A DNA stretch of 64,000 nucleotides from Paragordius varius (GCA_964247055.1 OZ176050.1:5332001-5396000); one strand, 5' to 3'. Counted from the stretch's first letter, positions 5,901 through 38,815 are shown. Made by a program: numbers and translations. The notes: a model not told the origin generated them from the letters alone.

Positions 5901-8900
5901 AATTAACATTTTATTGAACAATGAATGCTAAAAAATATTTAATAATACTTACTTTAGGAGAACGCTTTCTGACGAAGCCAAATCTGATAGAAAAATGTGG
6001 GAAAACACCCAAAATGAAATACGCCATATCTTACGCGATGTTACAACAAAGGCAAAAAAGGATGAAAAGTTATCGTATACCTTTTGCCACAAGAGTGGTA
6101 TAATTTTTAATTTAATTGACAATAATAACATTATTAATAATTTTGAATTTAATATAAATTTTGTTAATTATCTAAAATGTTAAGCCAATATGTTGCATGT
6201 GGAGAAAGCCATCAGCCTATCCCAAACATCCAGCAATTGCCAGGCCATACTTTTATTAAGAGGTAAAATATTTTTGAATATAATTAAAATATATAAACGG
6301 TAAAACATGAATTTGATCTTATTAAAAAATATATATAATAGAAAATTACAAATGTTCCGACCCAAATTTAAAACAGGCCATTCAAAATCATCCTTCTGCA
6401 TTTTTTATTAAACGACCGGCAAGAATCAATCCTGACAAAACTGTTTTTGAAGTATAATATATAAAATACTTAACATAAATTTTATTGTGGTCTAATTTGT
6501 TCAATAATTATTTATTTTTAAATGTAAAGAGCAAATTCGTACAAGATGTTATTCCGGCAATCAAGGAATTGATACAGGCATCTATTCAAACCAGCGCCCT
6601 TACAAATCTTAAAATACAAGACAAAGGATTAAAAGAAGTGTACAAAGAAAGTTTGGCACATTTGGATTTTTGGAATAATGTGGTTAAGGCAAAAGTTCCA
6701 ACCTTTGCTCAGAATAATGATTTATTGCATGCTGTTAAACAACTATGGGGTTTGGCAGATCATGCAACTCCATCGCAAAATAAGAATGTCACGGAAAACA
6801 GTGCTGAAAGTTCAAGACAAAGGTTGAATATGGAAAATCAAGGATGTCCCATCATCCTGACAGGGGGTGAAGGTGTGGGTAAAACATGTGCTTTAAGTCA
6901 GATATTAGAACTTGTGAATGAAGCCTACCCCAGGGACCAATCTCATGACCGAACAGTTTTGTTGCGTTTTGCAGGCCTTACACCAAAAACAGTGAACATG
7001 TCTCAATTGCTAAGAGGAATATGTTTGCATCTTTGGTATGCTATTAATATGTCGATTAAAGGGAAACGACAACAACCATTAGAAACGATATTTAAGGATT
7101 CGCAGCATTTCAATACCTTTAATATGTTTACCTTAATTGGTCGTTTCAACGATTTGTTAAAAACTTTGGGTGAAAGTGATAAAAATCGACATATATTCAT
7201 ACTGATAGATGATTTTCACAGAATATATCAACCAAGTTCTTGGTCTATGAACTCCGGCAATAAACAAAGTATAAATCCAGATGGTAATACTGGAAAAATG
7301 GGAACGCCTGGTAATACGCCAACATCCCCTCTTAAAATATTTCCCCAGGTTCTGCCCTCCAACATTCATATTGTCTTAACTATGAATCTTAATAAATACA
7401 TAAATGATCCAAACAGTCAGGACGGCCAAAAGCTGACTTCCCTTCTTCTTGATGATTTACGTCTCAATTTCGGGTCAAACACACAAATCCTACAAATTGA
7501 CACGGTCAACTCTCGTACACTTAACCCAATGTTCGTGCAAGATATATTTTCAAATGCCTTCAAGCAAGCCAAGATTGATCAGGAACCCAGATGGATGCAG
7601 CATTATTCAACGAAAACTCAACGTGAATCAGTGGTTAATTATCCCGCGGCACAAAAAATGGTTATAAATCAAGCTTTATTAGCAGGACGTATTCCCCTTT
7701 ATGCCACACTTTTGGCTCAAATAGCGAAAGATTGGTCCCTTCGGTACAAACCAGAAGGCATTAATACCTTGCCTCTTAACATTGTTTTGCTCATAAAAAC
7801 GATATTTGACAAAATTGATATACAAACTGAGGGTACAACGTTAACTTACATCTTAAGGTATTAATCCATGTTTTTTAATATTATCCATTGTATAAAAATT
7901 TGTATAATTATCCGTATATATTATTAGCTGCCTGATATGATGGTTTTTGAAATAAATTTTTTTTTATTAAAAATGCATTTAGTTTTTTTACGTTAAAAAG
8001 TCTAATAACTATGTTAATAATTTTTTTTTAATTACTTAATAAAACTCATTATTTGATTATATTTCAACAAAACGTATTAATTTAATGTTTGTAGTGTTAT
8101 AATCAGAAATTATATTCTTACACCTTTAATCAAATTTAAATTTGTAACAGGGGTTTTTAATATGATTAATGACTAAATTTATTTATTTCCAATGATTGTT
8201 AAAAAAATTTGTCGGAAAGGGATTGAATATGGGTTCATTGTTTTTATTAAAGGATCTTATAATCGCGGATTCTAAATTAAATTTATCTTTTCCATAAATT
8301 TAATTAAATTTTATTTTTTAAAATGTCATAGGTATATCTCATCATCCCATATCGGTATAACCGAAATCGAATTACTAGACATTCTTTCATGCACGAAACC
8401 TTTGATGGAGATGTATTTTCCTGGTGTGGTTACCTTTGATTCCAGATTTCCTTATTTTATGTGGGCCCTTATTAAAAAACGACTAGGTTTAGATTTATTT
8501 TATCATCATGGGTTCATTTAAGTATCAAACTCTTACACTAGGCTCATAAAGGTGTCAGAGATAAAATACCAAAACTCTATAATTTTATCATTACTGTCAC
8601 TGGACAGTCGATTGTTAAAATGATCATCCTTAATACAACTTAAATTATTTTTTTGAGCAAAAGATTCTTTACACTTTTCATACTATGACGGTTTTAATTC
8701 ATTTTGCATCTTATAAATAGAGCCACTTCTAGATCACAAGATCATTGATGGTAAGGTATTGATAAATTGGAATCATAAAGTCATTTGTAACATGGCCAAA
8801 ATGTATTCAATTCAGAAGCCTATAGAAATGGTATACTAGCTACAATTATTTCATTAAACTTTATGAATTAGGCATAAATATAAAAAATAATCATTATAAA

Positions 8901-14900: not shown

Positions 14901-17900
14901 TATTGGTCTTTTCCATTGCTTGTAGGCGTCTACTGATTATTTTTATGATATATGTAATGCTTCCGATTGCCGTTGAGTTTCAGTTGGGCCATCATCCAAT
15001 AATTCTAGCATCTTCGCCGTGGTTTATCAGAGCGCTTTCTTTCATATTGTCTCATAATTTTCGAACCATATTTCACTTTTACTCATTAGAGCATGTTACC
15101 ATATGTTTCTACCAGCACACATAATTTTCGACACATATGAATGGAATGCGTGCCGCAAATGTGCTTTTTCATGCACAAAATTCGGATCACTGAATGATAA
15201 ACTTAAAAAGTTAATTGGTGGACTCAACTTGTGTGTGTGTGTGTGTGTGTGTTTGTGGTTTAATGTCAAATGAACAAAGTGGCTGATAAACGCTAAACTG
15301 CCGAGATCGCACCATAACAATTTCATATGCCAGATTATCTCATGAAATATAAAATTAATCGGTGTGTACTTTTCGCTAACATTTTCTTTTAGTTAAGCCG
15401 GTAATGACTTGTGGCCTGTTTTTATTGCAATAAGGTGTTCGCAAAATGGCCTCCCTTTATATCAAATAATTTTAAAAGTTTATTGCTTAAATTATTTTTT
15501 CATATTTATACTTCAAATTTAAATAATAACTTCATTATAATTTTTTGGTATAATTCAGGTTCCGAGGACGGAGGTGTAAAAGTTTGGAATATGGAATTCA
15601 GTGAATTGCAAGAAAAACTACCTGATCATTCTAAAGGAATTACTTGTGTAAACTTTAGTCCATCTGGGACATATATTGTATCTGGATCGAAAGATACAAC
15701 GATTAACATTAAGCAACTTTACGAGGCTAGTTCCTTCATACGATTTACGGTAAAATTATTAGAGTTTTTTTAAAACATATTATATTAATAAATAGGCTTT
15801 TATCACAAATATAAGTTTTAATATTTTTAATCCACAAATATTTATTATTATTATAGTGTTATCAATGTTTTCATTTTTAAAAAAAAATTGAGAAATGAAA
15901 ATAAGTAAATCGTCAAATTTTATCATTTTTTGCATAAACAATGACTTAATTTGATTTTTATTTAATTTATTGAAAAGAACTGAAAATTTGATGTTTTGAC
16001 CGCTTTTATATAATAGGGTCATTCCAGCTCAATTACAAACGCAGTATTTAGTCAGGATGAAAAATCTATCATTTCATCAGAGGTTAATGATATAGTGAAG
16101 GTTTGGAGAGTAGATACCGGATTTACCTTATTGAATTGTAGCGTGCCGTCGCGCGTCTTAATGGTATCGCCAAACAGCTTGTTTGCCATATCTGGAAATC
16201 GTACTAATAGGTATATTATTAAAAAAGACTAAACTTTCCTTAAGGGTTTATAAATATTTTATTTAGTACTTTATAAAATTTAATATTATTCGTTTAATAC
16301 CCAAATTTTAGTATGAAAATTTGGAACGTAGAAGATGGTTCTTTGGTAAACAGTATTACCCATAGTGCTGAGATAAGCTGTCTGTCTATAACCACTAATT
16401 CCCAAATATGTGTTACAGGATCAAAGGATGAATCTTTAAAAGTTTGGGAAGTTACAACTGGAAAATTAACACAGGTATATGGTAAAATTGTTATATTTAC
16501 AAAATTATTTTGGCAAATATTGGCATATTGCATAATTTTTTGACCATGAGTATCCAAGATACTACATATCATATCAAAAAGAGGAATTATGTAACCATTT
16601 ATGAATATAGGTATTTATAATCAATAAATGATCTTTCATAGATCAATTTATATTTTTAAATTTAGTTAAGCGTTATACGCTGACCTTATAAGGCCATGAA
16701 ATACTATAAAACAGGGGTGGCCAACGAGGTGACCGCGGTCACTTTCGTGACCGCGACAACTCAAAAAGTGACCGTCTGAAAATATTTTTTTTTAAAAAAT
16801 TTTATTGATTTTTTTCGGATAGTTGGCTACTTCTGAGCGAATTTAAATTTAAAATACAAAAAAATACGGTTTAAATTAAAAAAAACGTCTAAGAAAAGGG
16901 TGTAAAAAAATTATTTTATTAATTATAATTCATATGTTTTGGAGCATTTGCATTAAAACTTAAAATCAGTCATTTCCCTTGAATATATCAAAACTTTGAG
17001 CAAAGCTTATTCATAAATCAGAAGCATAATCGTGAAGTTAGATTTGATTTGATACACCAAAAGTAGGTTTTTAAAACTTATATTTTAGAATGAGCCAAAA
17101 AAATTTGTACAGATACAAGAAAGATTGGGAGCATGAATACTTTTTTATTATGATAAATGAAACATGCACCTGTCTAATATGCAATAGTACTGTTGCTTTG
17201 CCCAAAAAGTCAAATATTGAAAGACATTATAGATCTCTGCATCCACATTACTCCAAAAACTACCCCTTACAAACTCAAGAACGCAACATTAAAGTAAAGG
17301 AATTAAAAGAACAATTATCCGCCTCACAAAATAGCATACTTAAATACAACAAAGACTATAAAAATGCTACGATTGCTTCATTCAAGGTAGCGGAAATACT
17401 CATTCGGAACAATATGCCATTCCAAGATGATGAAATATTTAAAGAAGCCTTTATTAGCGCTTGTGATATTTTATTTGAAAATTTTGATAACAAAAATAAT
17501 ATTATGACAGCTATTAAAAGCATAAGCTTATCGAGAAATACCGTTATGCGCAGGGCTGAAGATATTAGTAATAATCTTGATGAAATTTTACATGAAAATA
17601 TTAATAACTGTATTTTTTTTCCTTGCAACTCGATGAGTCCACCGATTATGTTGGAATCGCCCAATTATGCATTTTCATTCGTATGATATTTAGTGATTTA
17701 TCTGCAAAGGAGGAATTATTAACTATAATACCGCTCCACGAACGAACCAGAGGGCAGGATATTTTTGATTCTTTTTATAAATTTATCACAGATACGAAAC
17801 TTCCCATCGTAAAACTCGCATCTATAACTACTGATGGAGCTCCAGCTATGATTGGCGTTAACAACGGCTTTATCGCTTATGTAAAAATCACAGTGCATTT

Positions 17901-20900
17901 CCCAATTCATTGATTACCATTGTATAATCCATAATCAAGTTTTATGTTCAAAAGTTTTAAAATACCATCATGTAATGAACCCCTGTTTTAAAATTGTTAA
18001 CGCCATTCGAACAAAAAGCTTGTCCCGCCGCCAATTTCGAATTTTGTTAAATGAGTGCGGCGTGGAATATGGAGAACTTTTATTACATATTGATGTAAGG
18101 TGGTTGAGTCGTGCCGCATTTTTAATTAGATTTAGGCAACTTTTACCACAAATAGAAATTTTTTTAGAGAATTCTAAATTTTCATACCCTGAATTGAAAG
18201 ATCAAGATTGGCTGCTTGATCTTGAATTTTTATGCGATATCACGGAAAAATTGCATAAATTAAACATCCAATTACAAGGAAAAGATAAAACAATAATGGA
18301 TATGATGGGTGCTTTAAAATCTTTTAAGGAAACACTAACAGTAGTAGAAACACAATTAAAAAACCGAGATTTAAAACATTTTTTTAATCTGGCAGCGGTG
18401 TCTGAAAAAATAGAGAATCTCTCTTTTGAAAAATATGCAGATGATATTGGTCTGCTTATTAATGATTTTGAAAAACGATTTTCATCTATAAATAAACTTG
18501 AAGACATCGCTATTTTTTTATCATGCCCATTTAATAATAATAATAATAATAATGTTGAATATATTGCTCAAAAACTCAGCTACTTTCTTGGTGTACCAAA
18601 TTTAGCAGAGTTGGAAGAGGAATTAATAAATGTTAAATGCGATATCCATCTAAAATCATTAGGATCAGATATATATAAATTTATAAATAAAGATAAATAC
18701 CCCCATATTTGGAAAACCGCTGCATTATTCAATTCTTTTTTTGGATCCACATATTTATGTGAATCGGCGTTTTCAATTATGAATGCTATCAAAACTAAAC
18801 AGAGGTCACAATTAACTAATAAACATTTAGAATCATGTTTGAGAATTGCTTTGACTTCATTTGAACCTAATTTAGATAAACTTTCTGAATTTTTTCGCAG
18901 TCGGGCGTTTTAAATATTTTTTCCTTTATTAAATATGGATGTTTATCGAGTTGTATTTTCGCTTAGGAAAAAGCCGATTTACTAAAAAATATGTGGATAG
19001 AATTAAAACTGATACAATTTTAATGTACTTTTATTTATGTTCAAATTATGGTTCTAAATTGGAATGCTATTTTTTATTTCTTTTATTTTTTGTATCATAA
19101 TGTATTCTCCCCTGTAATTTCAAATGCATTGTTTAAATTTTTATATTGTAAAATTTCATATAATAGAAATTTAATAAATAAATATTTTGAAGTGTTTTAT
19201 GTTGGTTAAAAAATTAAGGTAGTTAATAACCCGTTGTCTTTTAATTAAGATTATTTTTGTATTTGGTTGATAGATAAAAAAATTACAATTTTAAAATGGT
19301 TTAAACAAGTCACCCTAATCTGTAAAGCAGGTATATACATCATTTAAAGTGTTGATTGAGTTTTTTTGATAAATATTTCTGGGTGACCGCGAACTCTTTT
19401 TTTTAACAAAAAAGCCAAAAAAAAGCTCGCGACAAAAAAAGTGTGGCCACACCCCTGCTATAAAAGAAACATGCTATGTACAGTGGCGGAACCAAAAGTC
19501 TGCCCGGTGGGTTATCAAGAGCCTATTGTACTAAAGGGCCCTTTTAAAATATAACTCAATATAATTATTATCTCTTAAATGGATACTAATAGCTGTAACA
19601 TTGACAAAGTCACAAATTTATACATTTTTTGGTTTTAGGTGTTGGTTGGCCATGAGGACGCAGTAACTTGTGTTACCACAAGTCATAATAACCAAAAAGT
19701 CATCTCTGGCTCTAAAGATAAAACGGTCATTATGTGGAACATTGATACGGGTAGTACACTGAAAACATATGCTGATCATAGTTTAGAGGTTACTTGCGTT
19801 GCAATCACTCAAGATAATTCTATCATTATCTCAAGTATTTTAACCAAAGATTTTTTTTAAAATTTTAACATTTGAATAATGTTTTTGCATCTTTTCCGTG
19901 GACCAACCGTTTAAATATTAACATTAAATTACCTAAAGATTTCTTGAGGTCAACATTGCATTTTTATAGGATTTTTAAATAAAAATTGTTAATCGTTTAA
20001 TTTAGACTAGGGTTGCTTATCGGTTATAATTCGTTCATTACCAGGATGGGACTGATTACAAAACGATCAAATTTTTTTGAACATATAGGGCAATTTGAAT
20101 ATTTTTAACGGTATTAAAATCAATTAATATAGCTATTGTGTTTAAATAAGTTACAGGAATATTTTTGGTACCAATTTCCTGATTATTACCATGAATGGGG
20201 CATCTGTTTTTATTTCAATCGGTCACAATGATTCAAAATGAAGCGCATGTATTATGTTGAAAGTAGTATATACTTTTTCCAGTGAATATCGCTGGGATTG
20301 ATTTTCATTATAGTTGTACATATGTTTGATTCAGGCGGCCTATTTTATATTTTTATGCGCTATATTTTATATAAATTAAATAACATTATTCATTTTTTGA
20401 TTAAATAGGTGCTCTAGATGGTACTCTACGAGTGTGGGATAGCAACAAAGGTACCCTCATAACTATATTTGATTGTCATTACCCTGTCATGAATTTTAGC
20501 GCATCTCCTGATGCCAGTCACATTTTAATTCGGTTGAATGATCCCCATGTACTCCTCATGTGTTTGCACAATAGTCCGGCATCCGATTACAGGGCAATGC
20601 AATCTCACAGCTTGGATGAAGGTTGAATGAATATAATATTTTTCAGAAAATTGAAAATAATGATTATCATCCGACTAATATTTGCTTTTTTCAGCCATGT
20701 TATATCATAATTTTTCCCCCTAACTTTTGAGTTTATAAGGTTTTTAAATCTTAAGCCAGGAAAAAAATGTTCCATCTAACTTTTAATATAAATCATTATA
20801 GCATTTGAGCTGCTTGAGTCATTTTCGTACTTGAGCCGGTCCATTAACCAAAATGTCTGGCTCAAGGCTCTTTTACATGGTTTTTAGTGTATTTTTTGAT

Positions 20901-22735: not shown

Positions 22736-23696
22736 TTTAATATTACAAAGAATTACTATTTATTGTTAATTATAAATTATTTATTAAATTTTAAGTTAAT
22801 GTAATTTATTTTTAGCGTTGAATTATGATTTTTATCGTTTTACCATCAATATTTGATGGTAAAATTGATTTTCAAACATTTTGATTTTGCCCATAAATTG
22901 CCTTATTTATTTATATTAATTATATTTTTCTTATACAATTCGCCTAATCAAATTATTTAATTTGCACTTCAAGAGTGTCTTTGAACACTTCCAGATGGTC
23001 CTTGAACATTTCAAGTTGGTTTTTGAACTCTTTAAGTTGGTCCTTAAAATATATAAATTTTGTTTTACCCTATTTATCAACCTAATTTTCTTTATTTATT
23101 ATATATTTATCCATTTAAAAATAAAAAATTTTATTAAAAAACCACTTTTTTGCAAAATAGTTTTATTAATTGAACAAAATTATTAACTTTTAATGTTTTT
23201 AATGAAAATTAAAACTCATATTTTTTTTTTCGTGTTATAAATATCTAAAATTATTTTAAGAAATTAATATACGGTTTCTCAAAGATTAAAAGTTGATATC
23301 GATTTAAAATATGTTAAATAATAGAAAAAGGTTAAAAACAATAAAATAAATAAATTATTTTCGGTTTAATTTAATAAAAGTTAAAAACAAAACAAAAAAG
23401 TCAAAGGACCAACTTGAATTGAAGTACAACTTTAAACTTTCAAAGACACTCTTGAAGTGCAAATTAAATAATTTGATTAGGCGAAACTAAAATTGTAAAA
23501 GAAAAATATAATTAATATAAATAAATACGGCAATTTATGGGCAAAATCAAAATGTTTGAAAATCAATTTTACCATCAAATATTGATGGTAAAACGATAAA
23601 AATCATAATTCAACGCTAAAAATAAATTACATTAACTAATTTAATAAATAATTTATAATTAACAATAAATAGTAATTCTTTGTAATATTAAAAAAA

Positions 23697-23970
23697 GTGT
23701 TGTTTTTGCTTGAAAAAATGTTGTCTTTGGTTGAAAAAATGTTGCGTTTGGATGAAAAAATGTTGTATTTGGTTGAAAAAATGTTGCGTTTGCTTGAAAA
23801 AATGTTGCGTTTGCTTGAAAAAATGTTGCGTTTGCTTAAAAAAATGTTGTCTTTGCTTGAAAAAATGTTGCATTTGCTTGAAAAATTGTTACCTTTGCTT
23901 GAAAAAATGTTGCGTTTGCTTGAAAAAATGGTGCGTTTGGTTGAAAAAATGATGTTTTTGCATGAAAAAT
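23697..23970. repeat. 21-bp minisatellite, 13 units (right foldback arm)
   Basis: Unit ~TGTTGCGTTTGCTTGAAAAAA; inverted copy of the left array plus one unit. Confidence 0.95.
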
Positions 23971-24444
23971 GGTATACCACATCGTTTTTAAAGTTAATAC
24001 CTCATTTGCATGAAAGATTATGTATTATTATTATATTAAGGAATAACCTTGCAACTAACGTTTTTAGTATTATCATATTATTGAATATACTGTAAAGTGG
24101 CAGGCACTTTATGAATAAATTTATACCTCATTAAGTCACTCATATATATATATATATATAATGTATTATTTTGATATATTTAACGACGTGTATTTTGGTT
24201 ATACAATAAATATCTCCTTTTACGCGGGGTTCCTATTTACAGGTGGTAGACATGGAAAGATTAATGATCAAAATAGTAAATTATAATCTTAATGTTTAAC
24301 ACCTATGTATTAAGTTTTGATATGCCATGCTATCCTCAAATTTATTTATACGGTCTGCAATAATTTTTTAGGTATCCTTGCATTACACTATGCGCAATTT
24401 TTTTTATCTTATACATGCGAATGCTCATGATCACATCGATTGAG

Positions 24445-26480: not shown

Positions 26481-26851
26481 TTATTTTTGTTCTCTTTTCA
26501 TTCCGCCCAAACACTTAGGAGATTCAGTGAATTCAAAATTTTCCTGAGGACTTTTTGCGATTATAGAAAGTGCATGTACAGTATCTTGCAATTCTTCTGC
26601 TAAGATATCATTTATAATACGGTGTCTCTACGTATTAAATACGATCAAACCTTAATCAATGACAAATCGTTAAATTTTTCACTAATCACAACAATTTTGA
26701 AATGAGTATTTGAATCTAATTTTATATTACTTAAACTTTTTGGAATATTATGCATGTAACTTTCATTTATTACATCTAAATATTTGGGCTATATTAAGTA
26801 TATAAATACTTGTAACGCTTTTAAAATTTTTTGATAAATTTTATCTCGCAT
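26481..26851 (-). CDS. BOLA1: BolA-like protein 1 (101 aa), 4 exons with three ultra-short introns
   Basis: Exons 26851-26810, 26788-26737, 26715-26651, 26627-26481 give MRDKIYQKILKALQPKYLDVINESYMHNIPKNSNTHFKIVVISEKFNDLSLIKRHRIINDILAEELQDTVHALSIIAKSPQENFEFTESPKCLGGMKREQK. BolA motifs NES..H, THF, RHR, VHAL and the BOLA1-type SPxCLGG tail are present. The true start may lie further upstream. Confidence 0.9.
26628..26650 (-). other. 23-nt intron (BOLA1 i3)
   Basis: GTTTGATCGTATTTAATACGTAG; joins LSLIK to RHRII. Confidence 0.88.
26716..26736 (-). other. 21-nt intron (BOLA1 i2), 3n and stop-free
   Basis: GTTTAAGTAATATAAAATTAG; removal restores BolA spacing H-x-x-P-x-x-S-x-T-H-F. Confidence 0.65.
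26789..26809 (-). other. 21-nt intron (BOLA1 i1)
   Basis: GTATTTATATACTTAATATAG; if retained it ends in an in-frame TAG. Confidence 0.85.
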
Positions 26852-30880: not shown

Positions 30881-32923
30881 ATGCTTAAGAAATTAATAGG
30901 AAAAATTACTTTTGCTTCAACTTTATCTAATAAATCGCCTATCGATGGAATTGATTCTGTTTTAAAGTTAATAAAACATCCCAAAGATAAAGTAATTATT
31001 AAGAAAGATTTGATAGATAAAAATAATGAAATAAACTCTGTTTCTCAAATAAAGTATTTTATATAAATAATTTAGAAATATAATTGAAGGGTTTAAATAT
31101 GATCGGAAGAAAGCAATTAAGAAGGAACCTATATCAGAAAACATACTAACTGAATCTGGTCAAAAGCATACAAAGTATGTATTGAACAAGTTTTACAATA
31201 TTTCGAACTTATTCGAAGAAGAGGATCCCATCAAAACAAAGTTATCATTGCAATATATTACAGCCATATGAGACAAAAAATTGACCTATTCGGGGCTAAA
31301 CCTCTAAATATATTTCTTAAGATGAGTGGCGAACGTAAAGCAGAAGATAGTGACATATATAATGTTTGGGATGAATTGCATCAAAAAGAATTAAAAAATA
31401 ATATTAGACAAGAACCCATAAATGCCTACGAAGAAACAATGCGAAAAACCGAAGAAGGTAGTCTTTGGAAATTTCCTATTGACAATGAAATTGGTAATAT
31501 TTTAGCTTTTATTCTGATAGTTTTTTTTTATAAAAAAATAAAAAAAATACTCAGTGATTTTTTGATTAACTCAACTTTATCTGGTTGTGAATCGGTAATT
31601 TCAGATAACTTTAGGTTATTAAATTCGCTTCTCTTTACAATTTCGTGAAAAGCATTTAGATAGTTTTTGGGTTAAAAAATAATATATATATATATATATT
31701 TCAATAAATTTCTCAATATTTTGGATGTTTCTTAGACAACTTTTAAAATATTTCTATTAATCTATCCCTTTAAAACATGATTAGCTAATGATCATTATAT
31801 TTCGCAAAAGTATACCTTTATATACATTTTTTTGAAACATCTTGGGTATGCTTCATATTACCATATTTTGGGTTTAATAAAATTTATACTGGCTAGCATA
31901 ATTCGTCAAATGACAAATGCATAAATTAAACACCTCTTATATCATATTAAACATCTCGCAATGAGTAGGGATGGAAAAAATATAAATTTTACTTAAATAC
32001 TGTTTCCTAAATCATTGTTTGCCAACAATGGGATTTTAAAAATTTACTAGAATTTTGTAGTACTCAATAGTAAGAGATTATGATAATGAATGAAATGATA
32101 ATGCGGTTAACAGGTTAGAAAAAAATTTAATATTTCCTATAAGCCAAAATTAAAAATTGCATTTTTGTACCACATTCAAATAAACTCAGATACAAAAATT
32201 TAAAACACGTCAACGAAATCTTATTGCTCAATAAGAATGATACTAAATGCGAGGCACTTACATTAGCTCAAATGTCGCACTTTGAAATCTATTATTGTTT
32301 TTATGCGGTAAAGGATTTTAATTTTTTAAATAATTATCATTTATTTACTATTTTACAGCTTACCCAATATATCGCTTTATAAAATGGTTTAATTCTTATA
32401 TAATTTTTTTTGATTATCTGTATTGAAGTGGGAGCAGCGTATATTTTTTACAAACTTAAGATGCTAAAAATTAAAGCATTTACCGCATAACAAGTTTGAT
32501 TCAAATTTAACGCCTCAAGGTATCGCTTAAAATTGTAAAATCTTTATGTATAATATTTTGCTTTTAGGTATATCATTATGGGATATATGTAAATAATCGT
32601 TGACGCATTTTTTTCTATTGTATTTAATTTTATTTGACAATTATGTAAAAGAAAGATAAAAACCTTATTAGCCTGTGCATTTTTCATATTGATATTCATT
32701 TTTATAAAGGTTTTAGCTACCAAATGATATATAATTTATAAACAACTTTTTTGGTGGGCATCGCGTGTATTTTAAAATTATTTTTCAGTTTTTTGAATAT
32801 CGTGACACACTATAATTACGTAATTTATTATTGAAAATCCAATGTAAGTAACAGTATTATATATTTATTCCAGCTAATATATTTTTTGGCTATATGATGC
32901 TGAGATGTATTTTTTGAATTACA

Positions 32924-34270: not shown

Positions 34271-35018
34271 TTTATTTAAATAGTTTTTTAATGTGTTAAA
34301 TTATCAAGTATATTTTATGTAAAATGGTTTGCTATCAACGAATACAGCAGTTTTTTAATTAACATTAAATATAATTAATATCAAAGCAGAAAAATAAACA
34401 CTCCTTTTTTATAGTTATAGTTATAATGTTATAAATGGGTTATCTCACAAAAGAGTACGTACAAAACAACGCTTCCCGTATAGAACTATATGAAAGCGTA
34501 ATAATTTATTATTAATTGAATGTAAATATTTTTTTACAAAACTTTTCAGATGTGGGGGAAGAAAAAAATGTTTCATTTCAAGATCATGTTTTTATTCACG
34601 ATTATTTCCTTGAACATTTACAGCATTTGAATTCGAATCACATTATGCATTTACCAAACCTTAAACATTTTATGGAGCTTGTTTGTGTTGGCCTTGGGCG
34701 CAATCCGCACTATACTGTTCAAGAAAAGCGTCAGATAGTTTTATGGTCTGACATATTTTGTTAAAATTGTTTAAGCCAGTACTTATATATTTTTGGTAAT
34801 ATGGACCATTATAATCTTTATTAAGCATTAAAAACAAAGTTTTGTTTTAACAACAATTTAATCCTATATATCAGAAGTATCACAATCTTTAGTTTAAAAT
34901 GTATTTACATTTATACTTATTACTTAGGTATGTCCAATACTTTGAATCAAAAAAAGATATTATTCAAGCATCCCTTGATATTCAAGAGAGTGATACTCAA
35001 CAAAGCGCAGTCATTTAA
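30881..35018 (+). CDS. MRPS31: Mitochondrial ribosomal protein S31 (mS31), 284 aa, 5 exons
   Basis: Exons 30881-31053, 31076-31240, 31264-31493, 34550-34745, 34928-35018 (855 nt). C-terminal domain LFGAKPLNIF..WDE..EEGSLWKFPIDNE..FQDHVF..HFMELVCVGLGRNPHYTVQEK..WYVQYFESKKDI matches the MRP-S31 pattern. Confidence 0.9.
31054..31075 (+). other. 22-nt intron (MRPS31 i1)
   Basis: GTATTTTATATAAATAATTTAG; removes an in-frame TAA and restores frame. Lies in the poorly conserved N-terminal region. Confidence 0.7.
31241..31263 (+). other. 23-nt intron (MRPS31 i2)
   Basis: GTTATCATTGCAATATATTACAG; restores frame into the conserved domain. A longer alternative from 31175 has the same phase. Confidence 0.6.
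32922..33002. repeat. (TA)n microsatellite (others at ~29950, ~34225, ~42625, ~49915)
   Basis: Long imperfect TA run. Confidence 0.9.
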
Positions 35019-35116: not shown

Positions 35117-36529
35117 TCACTTTTTAAACCATTTAACACACATTTTTATTGCATTACGACGTAGGATAGAATTACCGAAAAATATGAAATATGGAAATAT
35201 ATAAAACTTAAGAAAAATCAAAAGCACAGTTATAGTGCGCAAAAAAAAGCTTCGTGGTTCTTTGTCTTTGAGAGCACCAGTTAACCAAGCCCCCCTTGCT
35301 AATGTGATGATAGCCCATGGTAAGGTGGTGAACAACATTATAACACTTATCAAATTGGTAATGAAGGTTAAATTTTGATTTCTTTCACGTATGATTCCAG
35401 CTTTATCTTCTGAATACGTTTTTAAGTTTTTCAGAGTATAATCATGTTTCATTGATTTATTTGATGTGTGCCCATCTGTGATGGACAGAGCATTTTGTTG
35501 ATGTTTTTTGTCAATATTTTCTGGCTCTGAATGAATATTCGGTTTTATGTCCGTCTGTAACGTGGTTGGCCTCTTATTGTTTATTAAACCGAAAATTCCT
35601 GATGATTTTGATGTACGACTAGGTGTAACGCTTGCTGATAAGGCCTGATGGATTTTATTGCGTTTTCGTAAAAATATTTTTCCACAAACCAAATTTATAA
35701 TAATGATTATACATGGCAAAAGATATACAATGAAGATGTGAGCGGGATCAAAAAAGTTTCGACTAAATTTTATGAGTTGACGGTTAATTTTATCAGTATA
35801 GTTGATTGGTGATAACTTTACAAATATGATTGGTGTGTGGTTTTCGAAAATTCCATTTTGTTCAATTTTACAAAAGTATCTCCAAACCTGATTCAAATTA
35901 AAAAAGAACCAAAACGGTATATTTATTGAACAAGCGAATACGATGATGATTAGCAAGATTGTAAAAAGGAAAGAATCCTTACTATATTTCGTACGATAAA
36001 AAATCGGTAATTTTATTGCAAAAACTGTATCGAACGATAAAAAAACTACCAAATAATTTAGGATAGTTATAAGTATTTGATCTATGGCCCATTGTATTTT
36101 TACCATCCATGATATTACTAATATGCCAATTTGCTTATTGACATTCAACAAGTTACAATCTTGTTTAACATTATATTTAAGGATGAAAAAAAAGTAGTAC
36201 ATTGGCCAAAATAGCATTAAACAACAAATAATTAAACATGTCATAGTTATGGATTTCAAAAAGAAACGGATTTGTATTTTGTATTGTACAGGTTTTCCAC
36301 AATCTCCCGATCTACTTCCAAGCGCCCAAAATAAAACAAAATTTCCTAGAATACCTAATGGGGCAAAAACAAGTATAATTATACTTGCTGTATGATATTC
36401 GTTAAGTTTTGAAGAAGCTAATGTATCAGTATATGCTGTAAAAGATGACATTAGGTTTTGATAAAATAAAATTATAACTACAAAAAATAATTGTTTCCTA
36501 CCACATAACAACTTTGAAAAAATTGGCAT
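35117..36529 (-). CDS. Single-exon class A (rhodopsin-like) GPCR, peptide-receptor/chemoreceptor-like
   Basis: 470-aa ORF with seven hydrophobic segments: TM1 LGILGN; TM3 end SFDTVFAIKLP (DRxxAIxxP-like); TM4 INIPFW; TM5 YLLPC; TM6 TTLPW. The start may be Met at 36451. Confidence 0.85.
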   Translation of the reverse strand: MPIFSKLLCGRKQLFFVVIILFYQNLMSSFTAYTDTLASSKLNEYHTASIIILVFAPLGILGNFVLFWALGSRSGDCGKPVQYKIQIRFFLKSITMTCLIICCLMLFWPMYYFFFILKYNVKQDCNLLNVNKQIGILVISWMVKIQWAIDQILITILNYLVVFLSFDTVFAIKLPIFYRTKYSKDSFLFTILLIIIVFACSINIPFWFFFNLNQVWRYFCKIEQNGIFENHTPIIFVKLSPINYTDKINRQLIKFSRNFFDPAHIFIVYLLPCIIIIINLVCGKIFLRKRNKIHQALSASVTPSRTSKSSGIFGLINNKRPTTLQTDIKPNIHSEPENIDKKHQQNALSITDGHTSNKSMKHDYTLKNLKTYSEDKAGIIRERNQNLTFITNLISVIMLFTTLPWAIITLARGAWLTGALKDKEPRSFFLRTITVLLIFLKFYIFPYFIFFGNSILRRNAIKMCVKWFKK

Positions 36530-37053
36530 ACCTAAATCTTTAAAATTAATTACCTCCTTTACTCCAAAAATTTTGGCTATGAATATTCATTAGACTAATT
36601 GAAAAAATATCATAATAATAGGTTAAAATTAGGTGTTTGATTTAGAAAACGTATGATTTAATTAGAAAATCAATCAATAAATACCCTTTTGCAAAGACGG
36701 ATTATGAATAAAAGTCTTTATATTTAAACGTATTATAATTTAAAATATTGAATTCCTGTTATATCTTTTGACATATTAAGTATATATATATTGAACATGC
36801 AGCTTATTGGAAGCATAACTATATGCATTGATAATATTAATTTTTTCCTTAATGAATAGGAAAATGATAATGACTGGATTAATTAAAATTATAAAATTTT
36901 AATTATGAAATAAATTTTTAACAAAAATAACAAGTACTCAAAAAAATAAAATTCAACAATGGTAACAATTACTCAAAAAAATAAAATTATTGAACATGCA
37001 GCTTGATGAAACCATAACTATATGCATTGATCAAAACAAAAAAATAAAAAAAA

Positions 37054-37136
37054 TAGCACGGGTGGGGTTTGAACCCACGCGGACATACGTCCATTGGATC
37101 TTAAGTCCAACGCCTTAACCACTCGGCCACCGTGCT
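37054..37136 (-). tRNA. tRNA-Leu (anticodon TAA)
   Basis: AGCACGG/CCGTGCT acceptor stem; A box TGGCCGAGTGG; anticodon arm TTGGA-CTTAAGA-TCCAA; long variable arm; B box GGTTCAAACCC; oligo-T terminator downstream. Confidence 0.97.
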
Positions 37137-37214
37137 TGTGATATGAGTCCTCTCGTTTAATTTTATATTTCCAAAAAAGGTTTCAAGGTTCCTTATTTTA
37201 ATTAAAATGATCAT

Positions 37215-37516
37215 ATGAGTCGCTACTGGAAGGCCTCCTCTTCTCACATTGGATTATTGTCTAAAACAATTTTAGTAAGAGATAACAAGGTAGAGGAATC
37301 TTTTCAGGCGTTAAATCGGTTAGTTTTTTATTATTATTTTATAGAATTTTAAACCAAGAAAAAATAATACCTGCAATACGAAATAATAGATATTTCGAAA
37401 AACAACGACGCATAAGATTGGCTTTTGAATTTTGTAAATCTATATATAATTATGATATGAATCGTAAAATTCAATATGCTATTCGTAAAAATCGTCCTTC
37501 TCCATGGCTTGCATAA
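37215..37516 (+). CDS. MRPS21: Mitochondrial ribosomal protein S21 (bS21m), 91 aa, 2 exons
   Basis: Exons 37215-37318 and 37345-37516: ..SKTILVRDNKVEESFQALNRILNQEKII..RYFEKQRRIRLAFEFCKSIYNYDMNRKIQYAIRKNRPSPWLA*, collinear with animal MRPS21. Confidence 0.88.
37319..37344 (+). other. 26-nt intron (MRPS21 i1)
   Basis: GTTAGTTTTTTATTATTATTTTATAG; joins ALN-R-ILN. Confidence 0.88.
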
Positions 37517-37524
37517 TTAGAAAT

Positions 37525-38815
37525 ATGATAATATTCCGTTTAAATAGAACCTGGGCTATATATCCTCCAATTAATATTGATCAACATCGTCCAAACGATA
37601 TACGACAACCATTAAATAATTATACACCTGAAACCGATGATACCAATATAAATAATGAGAATAAAATACGAGATGTTTCAGGCCTTAACCCGGATTTAAA
37701 AAACATGTTTAAGAGTAATATTGTTCCACCCAAAGCTAAATTTGATCATCATTTACGACGTAATCATGTCCGAAGCATTTATTCAAATTATGGTTCTAGT
37801 TCAAGTTTTTGTTTTCTAATGTTTAAGATGTTGACCCATCCGTGTGTTGGCCCACACTCTCTGAAATTGAAAGAAAACAAGCTGACTCGAAAATTATAGA
37901 AACTCAATATTTTGAAGAAATGCAAAAAATAAATGAAAAAAACATTAGGGTTGCCAAAGCAGTTCAGCAACGTAGATCATTGGTAATTATTATTTATTTA
38001 CCTTAATCTCTTATAATTTTAAAAATGTACATCTGCATATTTTAAGGAGACATATATGTGCATCTTAATATATGATATTATTTTCACCTTAAGTTCGTCC
38101 TTCGGCAAATTAAAGTCTCAAAATTAAACAAAATTTTTGCTTAACGTATTTCTGACATAAGTTTTTAAAAGACTTATTGTTACCATTTTTTATAATTTTA
38201 GCACCTAAAATAACACCCTCAGATTTTATCAAATAAGCTATTGACATTTTTAATGTATCTTCATAATTATGGAATTTAATTAACAATTAATAACCTTTAT
38301 TTACAGTAGAATTTAATTTTGAATTTTAACCTGGTCGTTTTTTGACTTTCTATTTTTTTGTTTTGATATTTTGCAAAATTCTAAAAAACTTATATGATAT
38401 AGAGAGCAAGACGCCGGATTCGTACATTATGCATTTTAGCGGGCGAGTTTTAATGCTTTTAAGAATTTAATTATACAGCTTATTTCAATAAAAAATGAGA
38501 AAAAATAGACTACTCTATAATTTATATTAGATTAGGGAAAACATGAAAAAAATGTCACAATACATTGAACGGTACATGGATCGGGGATCTCAAGCAGCTA
38601 CCAAACAAGATGAGGTTAAAAAACAACGCCAACACGAAATGATGGAAGAGGCCCGTGAATATTTTGGTTATAGGATTCAAACACATGACCCCAGATTTCA
38701 AAAGTTAATGGAGGAACGGGAAATGGCTCGGAAAAAAATGCAAAGGCAGGAAAAGAAACGACAACAAGAATCGCGCAAGATTGCGGCCCTTGATATCCTG
38801 AAAACTGTTAAATAA
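37525..38815 (+). CDS. GADD45GIP1: GADD45GIP1/CRIF1, mitoribosomal protein mL64, ~239 aa, 3 exons
   Basis: Exons 37525-37804, 37828-37982, 38531-38815. YGSSSNVDPSVCWPT, IRENMKKM and EEAREYFGYRIQTHDPRFQKLM match the CRIF1 pattern. An in-frame alternative ATG lies at 37504. Confidence 0.88.
37805..37827 (+). other. 23-nt intron (mL64 i1)
   Basis: GTTTTTGTTTTCTAATGTTTAAG with CTAAT branch-like motif; removal gives an ungapped match to YGxxSxVxPxxxWP. Confidence 0.88.

What the first reader, a model, noticed from the sequence alone, without database searches (positions are those of the whole stretch)
37215..38815. MRPS21 and mL64 packed stop-to-start: dicistronic mRNA or shared first exon
MRPS21 stops at 37514-37516. 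The mL64 ATG is at 37525 (8-nt gap), and an in-frame ATG at 37504 overlaps the MRPS21 end. There is no room for a poly(A) signal plus promoter. Also, TAATTAG|AAATATG places an AG at 37519-37520. Splicing the MRPS21 exon-1 donor (37319) to it gives ..ALN-R-N-MIIFR.., in frame with mL64. Three models follow: reinitiation or leaky scanning on a bicistronic mRNA; alternative acceptors giving two mitoribosomal proteins (small and large subunit) with one N-terminal targeting exon; or trans-splicing at that AG. The in-frame fit has a 1-in-3 chance of being coincidental. I know of no report of this pairing.
Basis: partly seen in the sequence, partly recalled or inferred. Interest (0 to 1): 0.8.

Follow-up and report, generated by a model that had tools for sequence, protein, structure and literature searches.

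The report
Two mitoribosomal genes packed stop-to-start
In this horsehair-worm-type genome the genes for a small-subunit and a large-subunit mitochondrial ribosomal protein lie 8 bases apart, and a distant horsehair worm keeps the layout (13 bases), so one messenger RNA probably carries both, as in known fly gene pairs; no RNA data could be had to prove it.

Summary
Observation confirmed. MRPS21 (bS21m; 37215-37516, one 26-nt intron) stops 8 nt before the ATG of mL64/CRIF1 (37525-38815, introns of 23 and 548 nt). The in-frame ATG at 37504, the AG at 37519-20 and the in-frame exon-1-to-AG junction are all there.

New here: the nearest available relative, the horsehair worm Gordionus, has the same block. 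It holds a divergent tRNA-Leu, then MRPS21, then mL64 13 nt after the MRPS21 stop. mL64 synonymous sites are saturated between the two worms and the flanking genes differ. MRPS21 is not annotated in the Gordionus record.

In Gordionus the spacer has no AG. None lies within 109 nt upstream of the mL64 ATG, and the next three AGs downstream are out of frame. So the tight stop-start spacing is conserved, while the acceptor and the exon-sharing frame are not.

Best reading (about 0.5): a conserved dicistronic unit, with mL64 translated by reinitiation. An internal start site inside MRPS21 exon 2 may add to this or replace it.

Drosophila has close precedents (mRpL53-CG33155, also 8 nt). The scan has flagged many similar pairs elsewhere in this genome; for one, COX17-DPH3, a follow-up reported the same conservation. 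New member of a known kind.

The parts
37054..37136 (-). tRNA-Leu(TAA) gene, divergent from MRPS21, 78 nt from its ATG. The same arrangement is present in Gordionus.
   Evidence: ARAGORN. The orthologous tRNA is visible in L001 at about 7497-7580.
37137..37214 (+). Putative promoter and 5' UTR of the unit. A TATA-like TTTTATATTT (about 37166-37176) is conserved with Gordionus.
   Evidence: Alignment A1, columns 27-38. The promoter function is inferred.
37215..37318 (+). MRPS21 (bS21m) exon 1, 104 nt. The start context is weak (catATGa).
   Evidence: It is 79% identical to Gordionus L001:7668-7766.
37319..37344 (+). MRPS21 intron, 26 nt, GT..AG, phase 2. The position is the same in Gordionus, where the intron is 41 nt.
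37345..37516 (+). MRPS21 exon 2, with stop TAA at 37514-16.
   Evidence: PDB bS21m match at E = 1e-10. It is 70% identical to L001:7811-7981.
37433..37451 (+). 19-nt block TGTAAATCTATATATAATT, identical in Gordionus (L001 7904-7922). It holds TATATATAA 84 nt before the mL64 ATG. It is a candidate internal promoter or reinitiation element.
   Evidence: The 9-mer occurs 0.2 times per kb in the window. The function is inferred.
37484..37495 (+). 12-nt block CGTAAAAATCGT, identical in Gordionus (L001 7955-7966), despite six-fold degenerate Arg codons.
37417..37518 (+). 102-nt stretch with no AG before the junction. Gordionus has 122 nt without AG.
   Evidence: P about 0.011 and 0.02 by synonymous shuffles, with post hoc boundaries.
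37504..37506 (+). ATG in the mL64 frame that overlaps the MRPS21 end. It has no counterpart in Gordionus.
37517..37524 (+). 8-nt spacer TTAGAAAT. The AG at 37519-20 sits in TAATTAG|A, which resembles the 3' end of this genome's mini-introns.
   Evidence: TTAGA occurs 1.5 times per kb.
37525..37804 (+). mL64 (CRIF1) exon 1.
   Evidence: It is 39% identical to Gordionus L001:8061-8381. Pfam PF10147 match is weak.
37805..37827 (+). mL64 intron 1, 23 nt, GT..AG.
37828..37982 (+). mL64 exon 2.
37983..38530 (+). mL64 intron 2, 548 nt, GT..AG.
   Evidence: The exon 3 start fits the pig mL64 alignment.
38531..38815 (+). mL64 exon 3, with stop at 38813-15.
   Evidence: PF10147 at 3.9e-12, 46.8 bits against a cut-off of 29.5. 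PDB mL64 match at 3e-4. Gordionus XP_065314755.1 is 44% identical.

Best explanation
MRPS21 and mL64 form one conserved transcription unit of horsehair worms. A TATA-type promoter beside a divergent tRNA-Leu gene drives a transcript that runs through both reading frames. The only plausible poly(A) signals lie after mL64, so the mature mRNA is dicistronic.

MRPS21 is translated as the first cistron. mL64 is translated when ribosomes that finish MRPS21, or one of the short internal ORFs ending at the same place, resume at the ATG 8 nt downstream (13 nt in Gordionus). An additional shorter mL64 mRNA starting inside MRPS21 exon 2 may exist, as in many fly dicistronic loci.

Shown: the gene identities, the spacing, its conservation, the lack of a poly(A) signal before the junction, and the lack of a conserved acceptor. 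Inferred: the single transcript and the reinitiation.
For: - Stop-to-start gap is 8 nt here and 13 nt in Gordionus, on the same strand and in the same order.
- Both have a divergent tRNA-Leu about 80 nt upstream and a shared TATA-like motif.
- The two worms are far apart. mL64 is 39-44% identical and its synonymous codons match no more than chance (20 observed against 20.4 expected; 14 against 14.3). Flanking genes are not shared. So the linkage is maintained.
- There is no AATAAA or ATTAAA in the last 130 nt of MRPS21 or in the spacer. The only AATAAA in Gordionus would cut its ORF.
- MRPS21 is not a called gene in the Gordionus record, although the ORF is intact. It is also absent from the protein collection. 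This fits transcript models that span both ORFs and carry one annotated CDS.
- The junction RNA is unstructured (z 0.5 and 0.0).
- All internal AUG-started ORFs end 4-13 nt before the mL64 ATG.
- Precedent: Drosophila mRpL53-CG33155 is dicistronic with 8 nt between stop and start, one of 159 dicistronic pairs (PMC4528330).
- Unchecked scan notes list a dozen or more pairs in this genome with gaps of 10 nt or less, or TAATG overlaps. By my recollection of the usual sizes of the named proteins, the upstream genes are small.
Against: - No RNA-derived protein of either gene is in the collections.
- MRPS21 has 91 codons, long for efficient reinitiation in the systems studied so far.
- AUGs are not depleted in MRPS21, so leaky scanning cannot help.
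- The conserved TATATATAA block inside MRPS21 exon 2, and the excess of identical codons in its last half (21 against 14.7, p about 0.009), could mean a separate mL64 promoter.
- In this species the spacer carries a good-looking acceptor (TAATTAG|A).
Confidence: 0.5

Rival explanations
1. Overlapping monocistronic mRNAs. mL64 has its own promoter inside MRPS21 exon 2 (the conserved TATATATAA at 37441-37449), with a start site about 30 nt downstream. MRPS21 transcripts simply read on into mL64. The tight packing reflects a promoter embedded in coding sequence, not coupled translation.
For: - The 19-nt block TGTAAATCTATATATAATT is identical in both worms at synonymous sites, 84 and 89 nt before the mL64 ATG.
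- The last half of MRPS21 has more identical codons than expected (p about 0.009), while mL64 is saturated.
- The exact 9-mer is rare in the window (0.2 per kb).
- In flies the downstream partner of mRpL53 also has monocistronic transcripts from an alternative promoter.
Against: - The codons involved (Lys, Ile, Tyr, Asn) are AT-favoured anyway, and the split of the gene was chosen after looking.
- Such an mRNA would still carry one short upstream ORF (ATG 37476 here, 7952 in Gordionus).
- It does not explain why the spacing stays at 8-13 nt.
Confidence: 0.2
2. Operon resolved by spliced-leader trans-splicing, as in nematodes and tunicates. A leader is joined at the AG of 37519-20, giving a capped mL64 mRNA with a 4-nt untranslated stretch.
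For: - TAATTAG|A matches the 3' ends of this genome's mini-introns. TTAGA is expected in about 1 in 100 such spacers.
- A 102-nt AG-free zone lies upstream.
- The sister phylum Nematoda uses this mechanism (general knowledge).
- Scan notes list other pairs in this genome with 30-130-nt gaps.
Against: - Gordionus has no AG in its 13-nt spacer or in the 109 nt before the mL64 ATG.
- There is no poly(A) signal for MRPS21 before the acceptor.
- There is no Rfam spliced-leader RNA in the window, which is weak evidence because such genes lie elsewhere.
- No paper in the library links nematomorphs with spliced leaders.
Confidence: 0.12
3. Alternative 3' splice sites. The MRPS21 exon-1 donor (37319) joins either 37345 (giving MRPS21) or 37521 (giving an mL64 that carries the first 35 residues of MRPS21), so the two proteins share a start codon and an N-terminal exon.
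For: - The junction is in frame here and the acceptor looks canonical.
- Fly mRpL13 and CG10602 share a first exon and 49 N-terminal residues.
Against: - In frame by a 1-in-3 chance.
- In Gordionus there is no AG before the ATG, and the next three AGs are out of frame and run into stops.
- Exon 1 encodes a conserved part of bS21m (79% identical to Gordionus). It is not a detachable targeting peptide.
- The Gordionus mL64 models start at their own ATG, with an N-terminus unlike MRPS21.
Confidence: 0.06

Closest known systems
Drosophila dicistronic pair mRpL53-CG33155 (FlyBase, PMC4528330 File S1)
   Same: A small mitoribosomal protein is the 5' cistron, with exactly 8 nt between stop and start on the same strand. 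The upstream gene is known only from the dicistronic transcript. The setting is an ecdysozoan that lacks spliced-leader trans-splicing.
   Different: The fly partner is unrelated in function; here both partners are mitoribosomal proteins, one per subunit. The fly case rests on cDNA and RNA-seq. Here the transcript is inferred from spacing and conservation only.
Nematode and tunicate operons resolved by spliced-leader trans-splicing
   Same: Same-strand genes under one promoter. In this species there is an acceptor-like AG just before the downstream ATG.
   Different: Those operons leave room for the upstream 3' UTR and poly(A) signal. Here the stop-to-start distance is 8-13 nt with no poly(A) signal, the acceptor is missing in Gordionus, and no leader is known in hairworms.
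Drosophila mRpL13/CG10602 shared first coding exon (PMC4528330 File S2)
   Different: Here the in-frame junction exists in one species only, and no junction read is available.
Termination-reinitiation on viral bicistronic RNAs (calicivirus, influenza B M1/BM2; from general knowledge)
   Same: A long upstream ORF, stop and restart codons within a few bases, and a constrained sequence in the last 40-90 nt or so of the upstream ORF.
   Different: No UGGGA-type motif was seen. Pairing to 18S rRNA could not be tested. This is a cellular gene pair.

Membership tests
bS21m / MRPS21 | Sequence similarity to solved mitoribosomal bS21m | tested here: met
   Exon 2 matches human, pig and mouse bS21m chains at E = 1.1e-10 over residues 28-83.
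bS21m / MRPS21 | Pfam Ribosomal_S21 match above the curated cut-off | tested here: inconclusive
Exons were searched apart (34 and 56 aa) and gave no Pfam family.
bS21m / MRPS21 | Intact ORF with an orthologue in a relative | tested here: met
   91 codons, GT..AG intron and a stop. The Gordionus orthologue is 70-79% identical with the intron at the same position.
mL64 / CRIF1 (PF10147) | Pfam CR6_interact above the gathering score | tested here: met
   The last exon scores 46.8 bits against a cut-off of 29.5, E = 3.9e-12. Solved mL64 chains match at 3e-4.
Dicistronic mRNA gene pair (fly type) | Same strand, with a stop-to-start gap too short for a poly(A) signal plus a promoter | tested here: met
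   The gap is 8 nt. There is no AATAAA or ATTAAA in the last 130 nt of MRPS21.
Dicistronic mRNA gene pair (fly type) | Arrangement conserved in a related species | tested here: met
   Gordionus L001 has the MRPS21 stop at 7985-87 and the mL64 ATG at 8001.
Dicistronic mRNA gene pair (fly type) | A mature transcript that spans both ORFs | not testable with these tools
No RNA-derived contig is on record.
Dicistronic mRNA gene pair (fly type) | Downstream ORF translated from that transcript | not testable with these tools
   This needs ribosome profiling or reporters.
Spliced-leader operon | 3' splice acceptor between the cistrons | tested here: inconclusive
   Present here (AG at 37519-20 in TAATTAG|A). 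Absent in Gordionus, where there is no AG from 7893 to 8014.
Spliced-leader operon | Poly(A) signal for the upstream gene before the acceptor | tested here: not met
Spliced-leader operon | A leader RNA gene, or leader sequence on mRNAs | not testable with these tools
   There is no Rfam match in the window, but leader genes need not lie here. No reads were available.
Shared N-terminal coding exon | In-frame donor-acceptor pair, conserved | tested here: not met
   In frame in the window only. All three Gordionus candidates are out of frame.

The most novel reading that the evidence does not exclude
Horsehair worms carry a genome-wide, conserved class of true dicistronic mRNAs. In this class a small housekeeping gene (MRPS21, COX17, PFDN1, STMP1 and others) ends 0-13 nt before the start of a second gene, and the second is made by termination-reinitiation after an unusually long (about 50-145 codon) first cistron. 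The process would be helped by a conserved element in the last 100 nt or so of that cistron. In this pair it would tie the output of a small-subunit and a large-subunit mitoribosomal protein together. Such hidden first cistrons would also account for some of the 'missing' conserved genes reported for this phylum.
Probability: 0.25. Interest if true: 0.75.

Novelty: new member of a known kind. Interest (0 to 1): 0.45.

Why it matters
If one mRNA really yields both proteins, the pair is a natural case of translation restarting after a 91-codon reading frame in an animal. It would couple proteins of the two mitoribosomal subunits.

It also has a practical side. MRPS21 is intact but unannotated in the Gordionus reference. 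Gene finders that allow one coding region per transcript will miss such first cistrons. Hairworm genomes score low on conserved-gene completeness (71.6% BUSCO in Gordionus). Some of that deficit may be hidden genes of this kind; this is an inference and was not tested.

Together with the other pairs flagged in this genome, the locus gives a concrete set for a long-read cDNA experiment. That experiment would also settle whether the sister phylum of nematodes has operons, spliced leaders, or neither.

Tried and rejected
- **Read laying.** Those letters were sent to no search afterwards. Rfam was run on 1-37060 and 37140-64000 only, and alignment A1 starts after the tRNA. The Gordionus copy of the tRNA was only displayed. 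It also lay in the subject of local BLAST runs.
- **Run search.** Five holders look like DNA. The guessed RNA runs hold about 1% of the words.
- **Word searches.** MRPS21 exon 2 and mL64 exon 1 found nothing. The full Gordionus mL64 found only itself.
- **Exact look-ups.** Three window ORFs and P0001 were not on record.
- **Rfam.** No match in the window.
- **RNA folding of the junction.** No structure beyond shuffles, so an IRES-like fold was dropped.
- **Leaky scanning.** Dropped because AUGs are not depleted in MRPS21.
- **Readthrough or frameshift fusion.** Dropped. mL64 is offset from the MRPS21 frame by 2 here and by 1 in Gordionus, and stops follow at once.
- **General animal synteny.** Rejected. 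There is no MRPS21 near mL64 in loci L002-L005, and L006 is a short (1,084-nt) contig that carries mL64 alone.
- **Literature.** No paper links nematomorphs and spliced leaders, or MRPS21 and dicistronic genes.
- **Dicyemid identity.** My early guess from the 21-26-nt introns was wrong. The best relative is Gordionus.
- **Joined models.** The joined (spliced) protein models were not sent to any search or fold tool. Exons were joined only inside local scripts, to compare codons.

Full report
**What is there**

The window is 25-31% G+C throughout.

MRPS21 on the + strand:
- ATG at 37215 and exon 1 at 37215-37318.
- A 26-nt GT..AG intron at 37319-37344.
- Exon 2 at 37345-37516, ending in TAA.
- Exon 2 alone matches solved human, pig and mouse bS21m at E = 1e-10.

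mL64 (CRIF1) follows eight bases later, after the spacer TTAGAAAT:
- ATG at 37525 and exon 1 at 37525-37804.
- A 23-nt intron, then exon 2 at 37828-37982.
- A 548-nt intron, then exon 3 at 38531-38815.
- The last exon passes Pfam's cut-off for PF10147 (46.8 against 29.5 bits) and matches solved mL64 chains.

There is an ATG at 37504 in the mL64 frame and an AG at 37519-20. Joining the exon-1 donor to that AG gives an in-frame junction reading R-N-M-I-I-F-R. A tRNA-Leu(TAA) gene lies on the minus strand at 37054-37136, 78 nt from the MRPS21 ATG.

**RNA evidence could not be had**

The run search found five holders that look like DNA. The guessed RNA runs hold next to none of the words.

The Rfam scans were run on 1-37060 and 37140-64000 and found nothing. 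Exact look-ups and word searches found no transcript-derived protein of either gene.

**A relative**

An exhaustive profile-free search with the last mL64 exon gave one clear best hit at 44% identity. It is XP_065314755.1 of Gordionus sp. m RMFG-2023, a horsehair worm. That genome has 26.9% G+C, like the window. This fits earlier scan notes that call this genome hairworm-like.

The Gordionus locus L001 holds an intact but unannotated MRPS21 directly upstream of mL64, on the same strand:
- Exon 1 is 79% identical and exon 2 is 70% identical to the window's.
- ATG at 7662, a 41-nt intron at the same codon position, and TAA at 7985-87.
- A 13-nt spacer ATTGGTCATATTT, then the mL64 ATG at 8001.
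- The minus-strand tRNA-Leu is also there, about 80 nt upstream.
- A TATA-like TTTTATATTT lies at a similar place in both.

Nothing else within about 8 kb is shared. mL64 synonymous codons match no more than chance between the two worms (20 observed against 20.4 expected; 14 against 14.3). So the block has been kept over a long time.

mL64 loci of four other animals show no MRPS21 nearby. One is the mollusc Babylonia and one is a short (1,084-nt) contig that carries mL64 alone.

**What the comparison says about the three models**

The spacing is conserved; the acceptor is not. Gordionus has no AG from 7893 to 8014. That covers the spacer and the 109 nt before the ATG. The next three AGs give out-of-frame junctions that run into stops. 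So trans-splicing or alternative cis-splicing at a spacer AG cannot be the shared mechanism.

MRPS21 exon 1 encodes a conserved part of the protein (79% identical to Gordionus). It is not a separable targeting peptide. The Gordionus mL64 models start with their own, unrelated N-terminus.

In this species alone the spacer does look like a real acceptor. TAATTAG|A resembles the ends of the local 21-26-nt introns. TTAGA occurs only 1.5 times per kb. A species-specific splice therefore stays possible.

**How MRPS21 gets a 3' end**

There is no AATAAA or ATTAAA in the last 130 nt of MRPS21 or in the spacer. The one AATAAA in Gordionus (7939) would cut the ORF. MRPS21 transcripts must therefore run into mL64, and most simply to its end.

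The missing MRPS21 annotation in Gordionus is what one expects if transcript models span both ORFs and only the longer ORF is called.

**How mL64 is translated**

Leaky scanning is not favoured. MRPS21 has as many internal AUGs as synonymous shuffles give (4 against 3.0; 3 against 3.7).

Every ORF opened by those AUGs ends 4-13 nt before the mL64 ATG, apart from the ORF opened at 37504, which is the mL64 frame itself. The junction RNA is unstructured. Both points suit reinitiation.

Two observations remain unexplained.
- The last half of MRPS21 keeps more identical codons than expected (21 against 14.7, p about 0.009, post hoc). There are two perfect blocks. One is TGTAAATCTATATATAATT, which holds TATATATAA 84-89 nt before the mL64 ATG. 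The other is CGTAAAAATCGT.
- Both worms avoid AG for 100 nt or more before the mL64 ATG (P about 0.011 and 0.02).

The first could be an internal mL64 promoter or a reinitiation element. I cannot tell which.

**What is known**

FlyBase lists 159 dicistronic pairs in Drosophila. One is mRpL53-CG33155, with 8 nt between stop and start. There the mitoribosomal gene is known only from the dicistronic transcript, and the partner also has its own promoter. The same source lists mRpL13/CG10602, which share a first exon and 49 residues.

I found no report of the MRPS21-mL64 pairing, nor of spliced leaders in nematomorphs.

The scan has flagged this kind of packing many times elsewhere in this genome. 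Examples are ANAPC16-RCL1, PFDN1-TMEM199, NDUFAF8-UTP6, STMP1-PET100 and MSS4-MPDU1. For COX17-DPH3 another follow-up reported the same conservation in a distant hairworm, also without RNA. By my recollection of the usual sizes of the named proteins, the upstream partner in the tight pairs is small, which fits restart after a first cistron. These notes are unchecked leads.

**Verdict**

My estimates:
- Conserved dicistronic unit with reinitiation: about 0.5.
- Internal promoter with overlapping mRNAs: about 0.2.
- Spliced-leader operon: about 0.12.
- Shared first exon: about 0.06.

It is a new member of a known kind. Its added interest is that two mitoribosomal subunits are linked and that it belongs to an apparently genome-wide class in a little-studied phylum.

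The joined protein models were never sent to a search or fold tool. Exons were joined only in local scripts, for codon comparison.

Noticed in passing
window 31268-31648 and 34516-34764 (+): Two exons of MRPS31 (mS31; PF15433, E = 6e-19 and 2e-13). This is a third mitoribosomal protein gene within about 6 kb upstream of MRPS21/mL64 on the same strand. It is not within 7.6 kb upstream in Gordionus.
   Followed up: partly
L001 7662-7987 (Gordionus OX940784.2): An intact MRPS21 gene (94 codons, one 41-nt intron) that is not among the called genes of the Gordionus record. It is a hidden first cistron.
   Followed up: yes
window 26481-26851 (-): The BOLA1-like gene read on the minus strand has three GT..AG introns of 21, 21 and 23 nt. 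Their ends (ttaatatag, aaaattag, aatacgtag) resemble the TAATTAG of the MRPS21/mL64 spacer. The orthologous MRPS21 and mL64 introns in Gordionus are longer (about 41-55 nt).
   Followed up: partly
window 36785-36835 and 36985-37035 (+): A direct repeat of about 45 nt (ATTGAACATGCAGCTT..ATAACTATATGCATTGAT), 200 nt apart, just beside the tRNA-Leu. Short internal repeats (ACTCAAAAAAATAAAATT) lie between the two copies.
   Followed up: no
window 35117-36529 (-): An intronless 470-aa ORF with many hydrophobic stretches, receptor- or transporter-like. It has no Pfam family above threshold and no counterpart in the Gordionus locus.
   Followed up: partly
window 17090-18913 (+): Two adjacent ORFs, one with a Spin-doc-type zinc finger and one with a hAT dimerisation domain. 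This is probably a hAT-type transposase gene or a domesticated copy.
   Followed up: partly
window 6485-7864 and 15411-15773 (+): A large P-loop NTPase exon (AAA_22 / NPHP3_N-like) and a WD40 exon. They may belong to one NACHT-WD-type gene spanning about 10 kb.
   Followed up: no
window 23636-24095 (both strands): ORFs on both strands across a tandem array whose unit encodes KRNIFSS-like repeats. This is probably a minisatellite rather than a gene.
   Followed up: no
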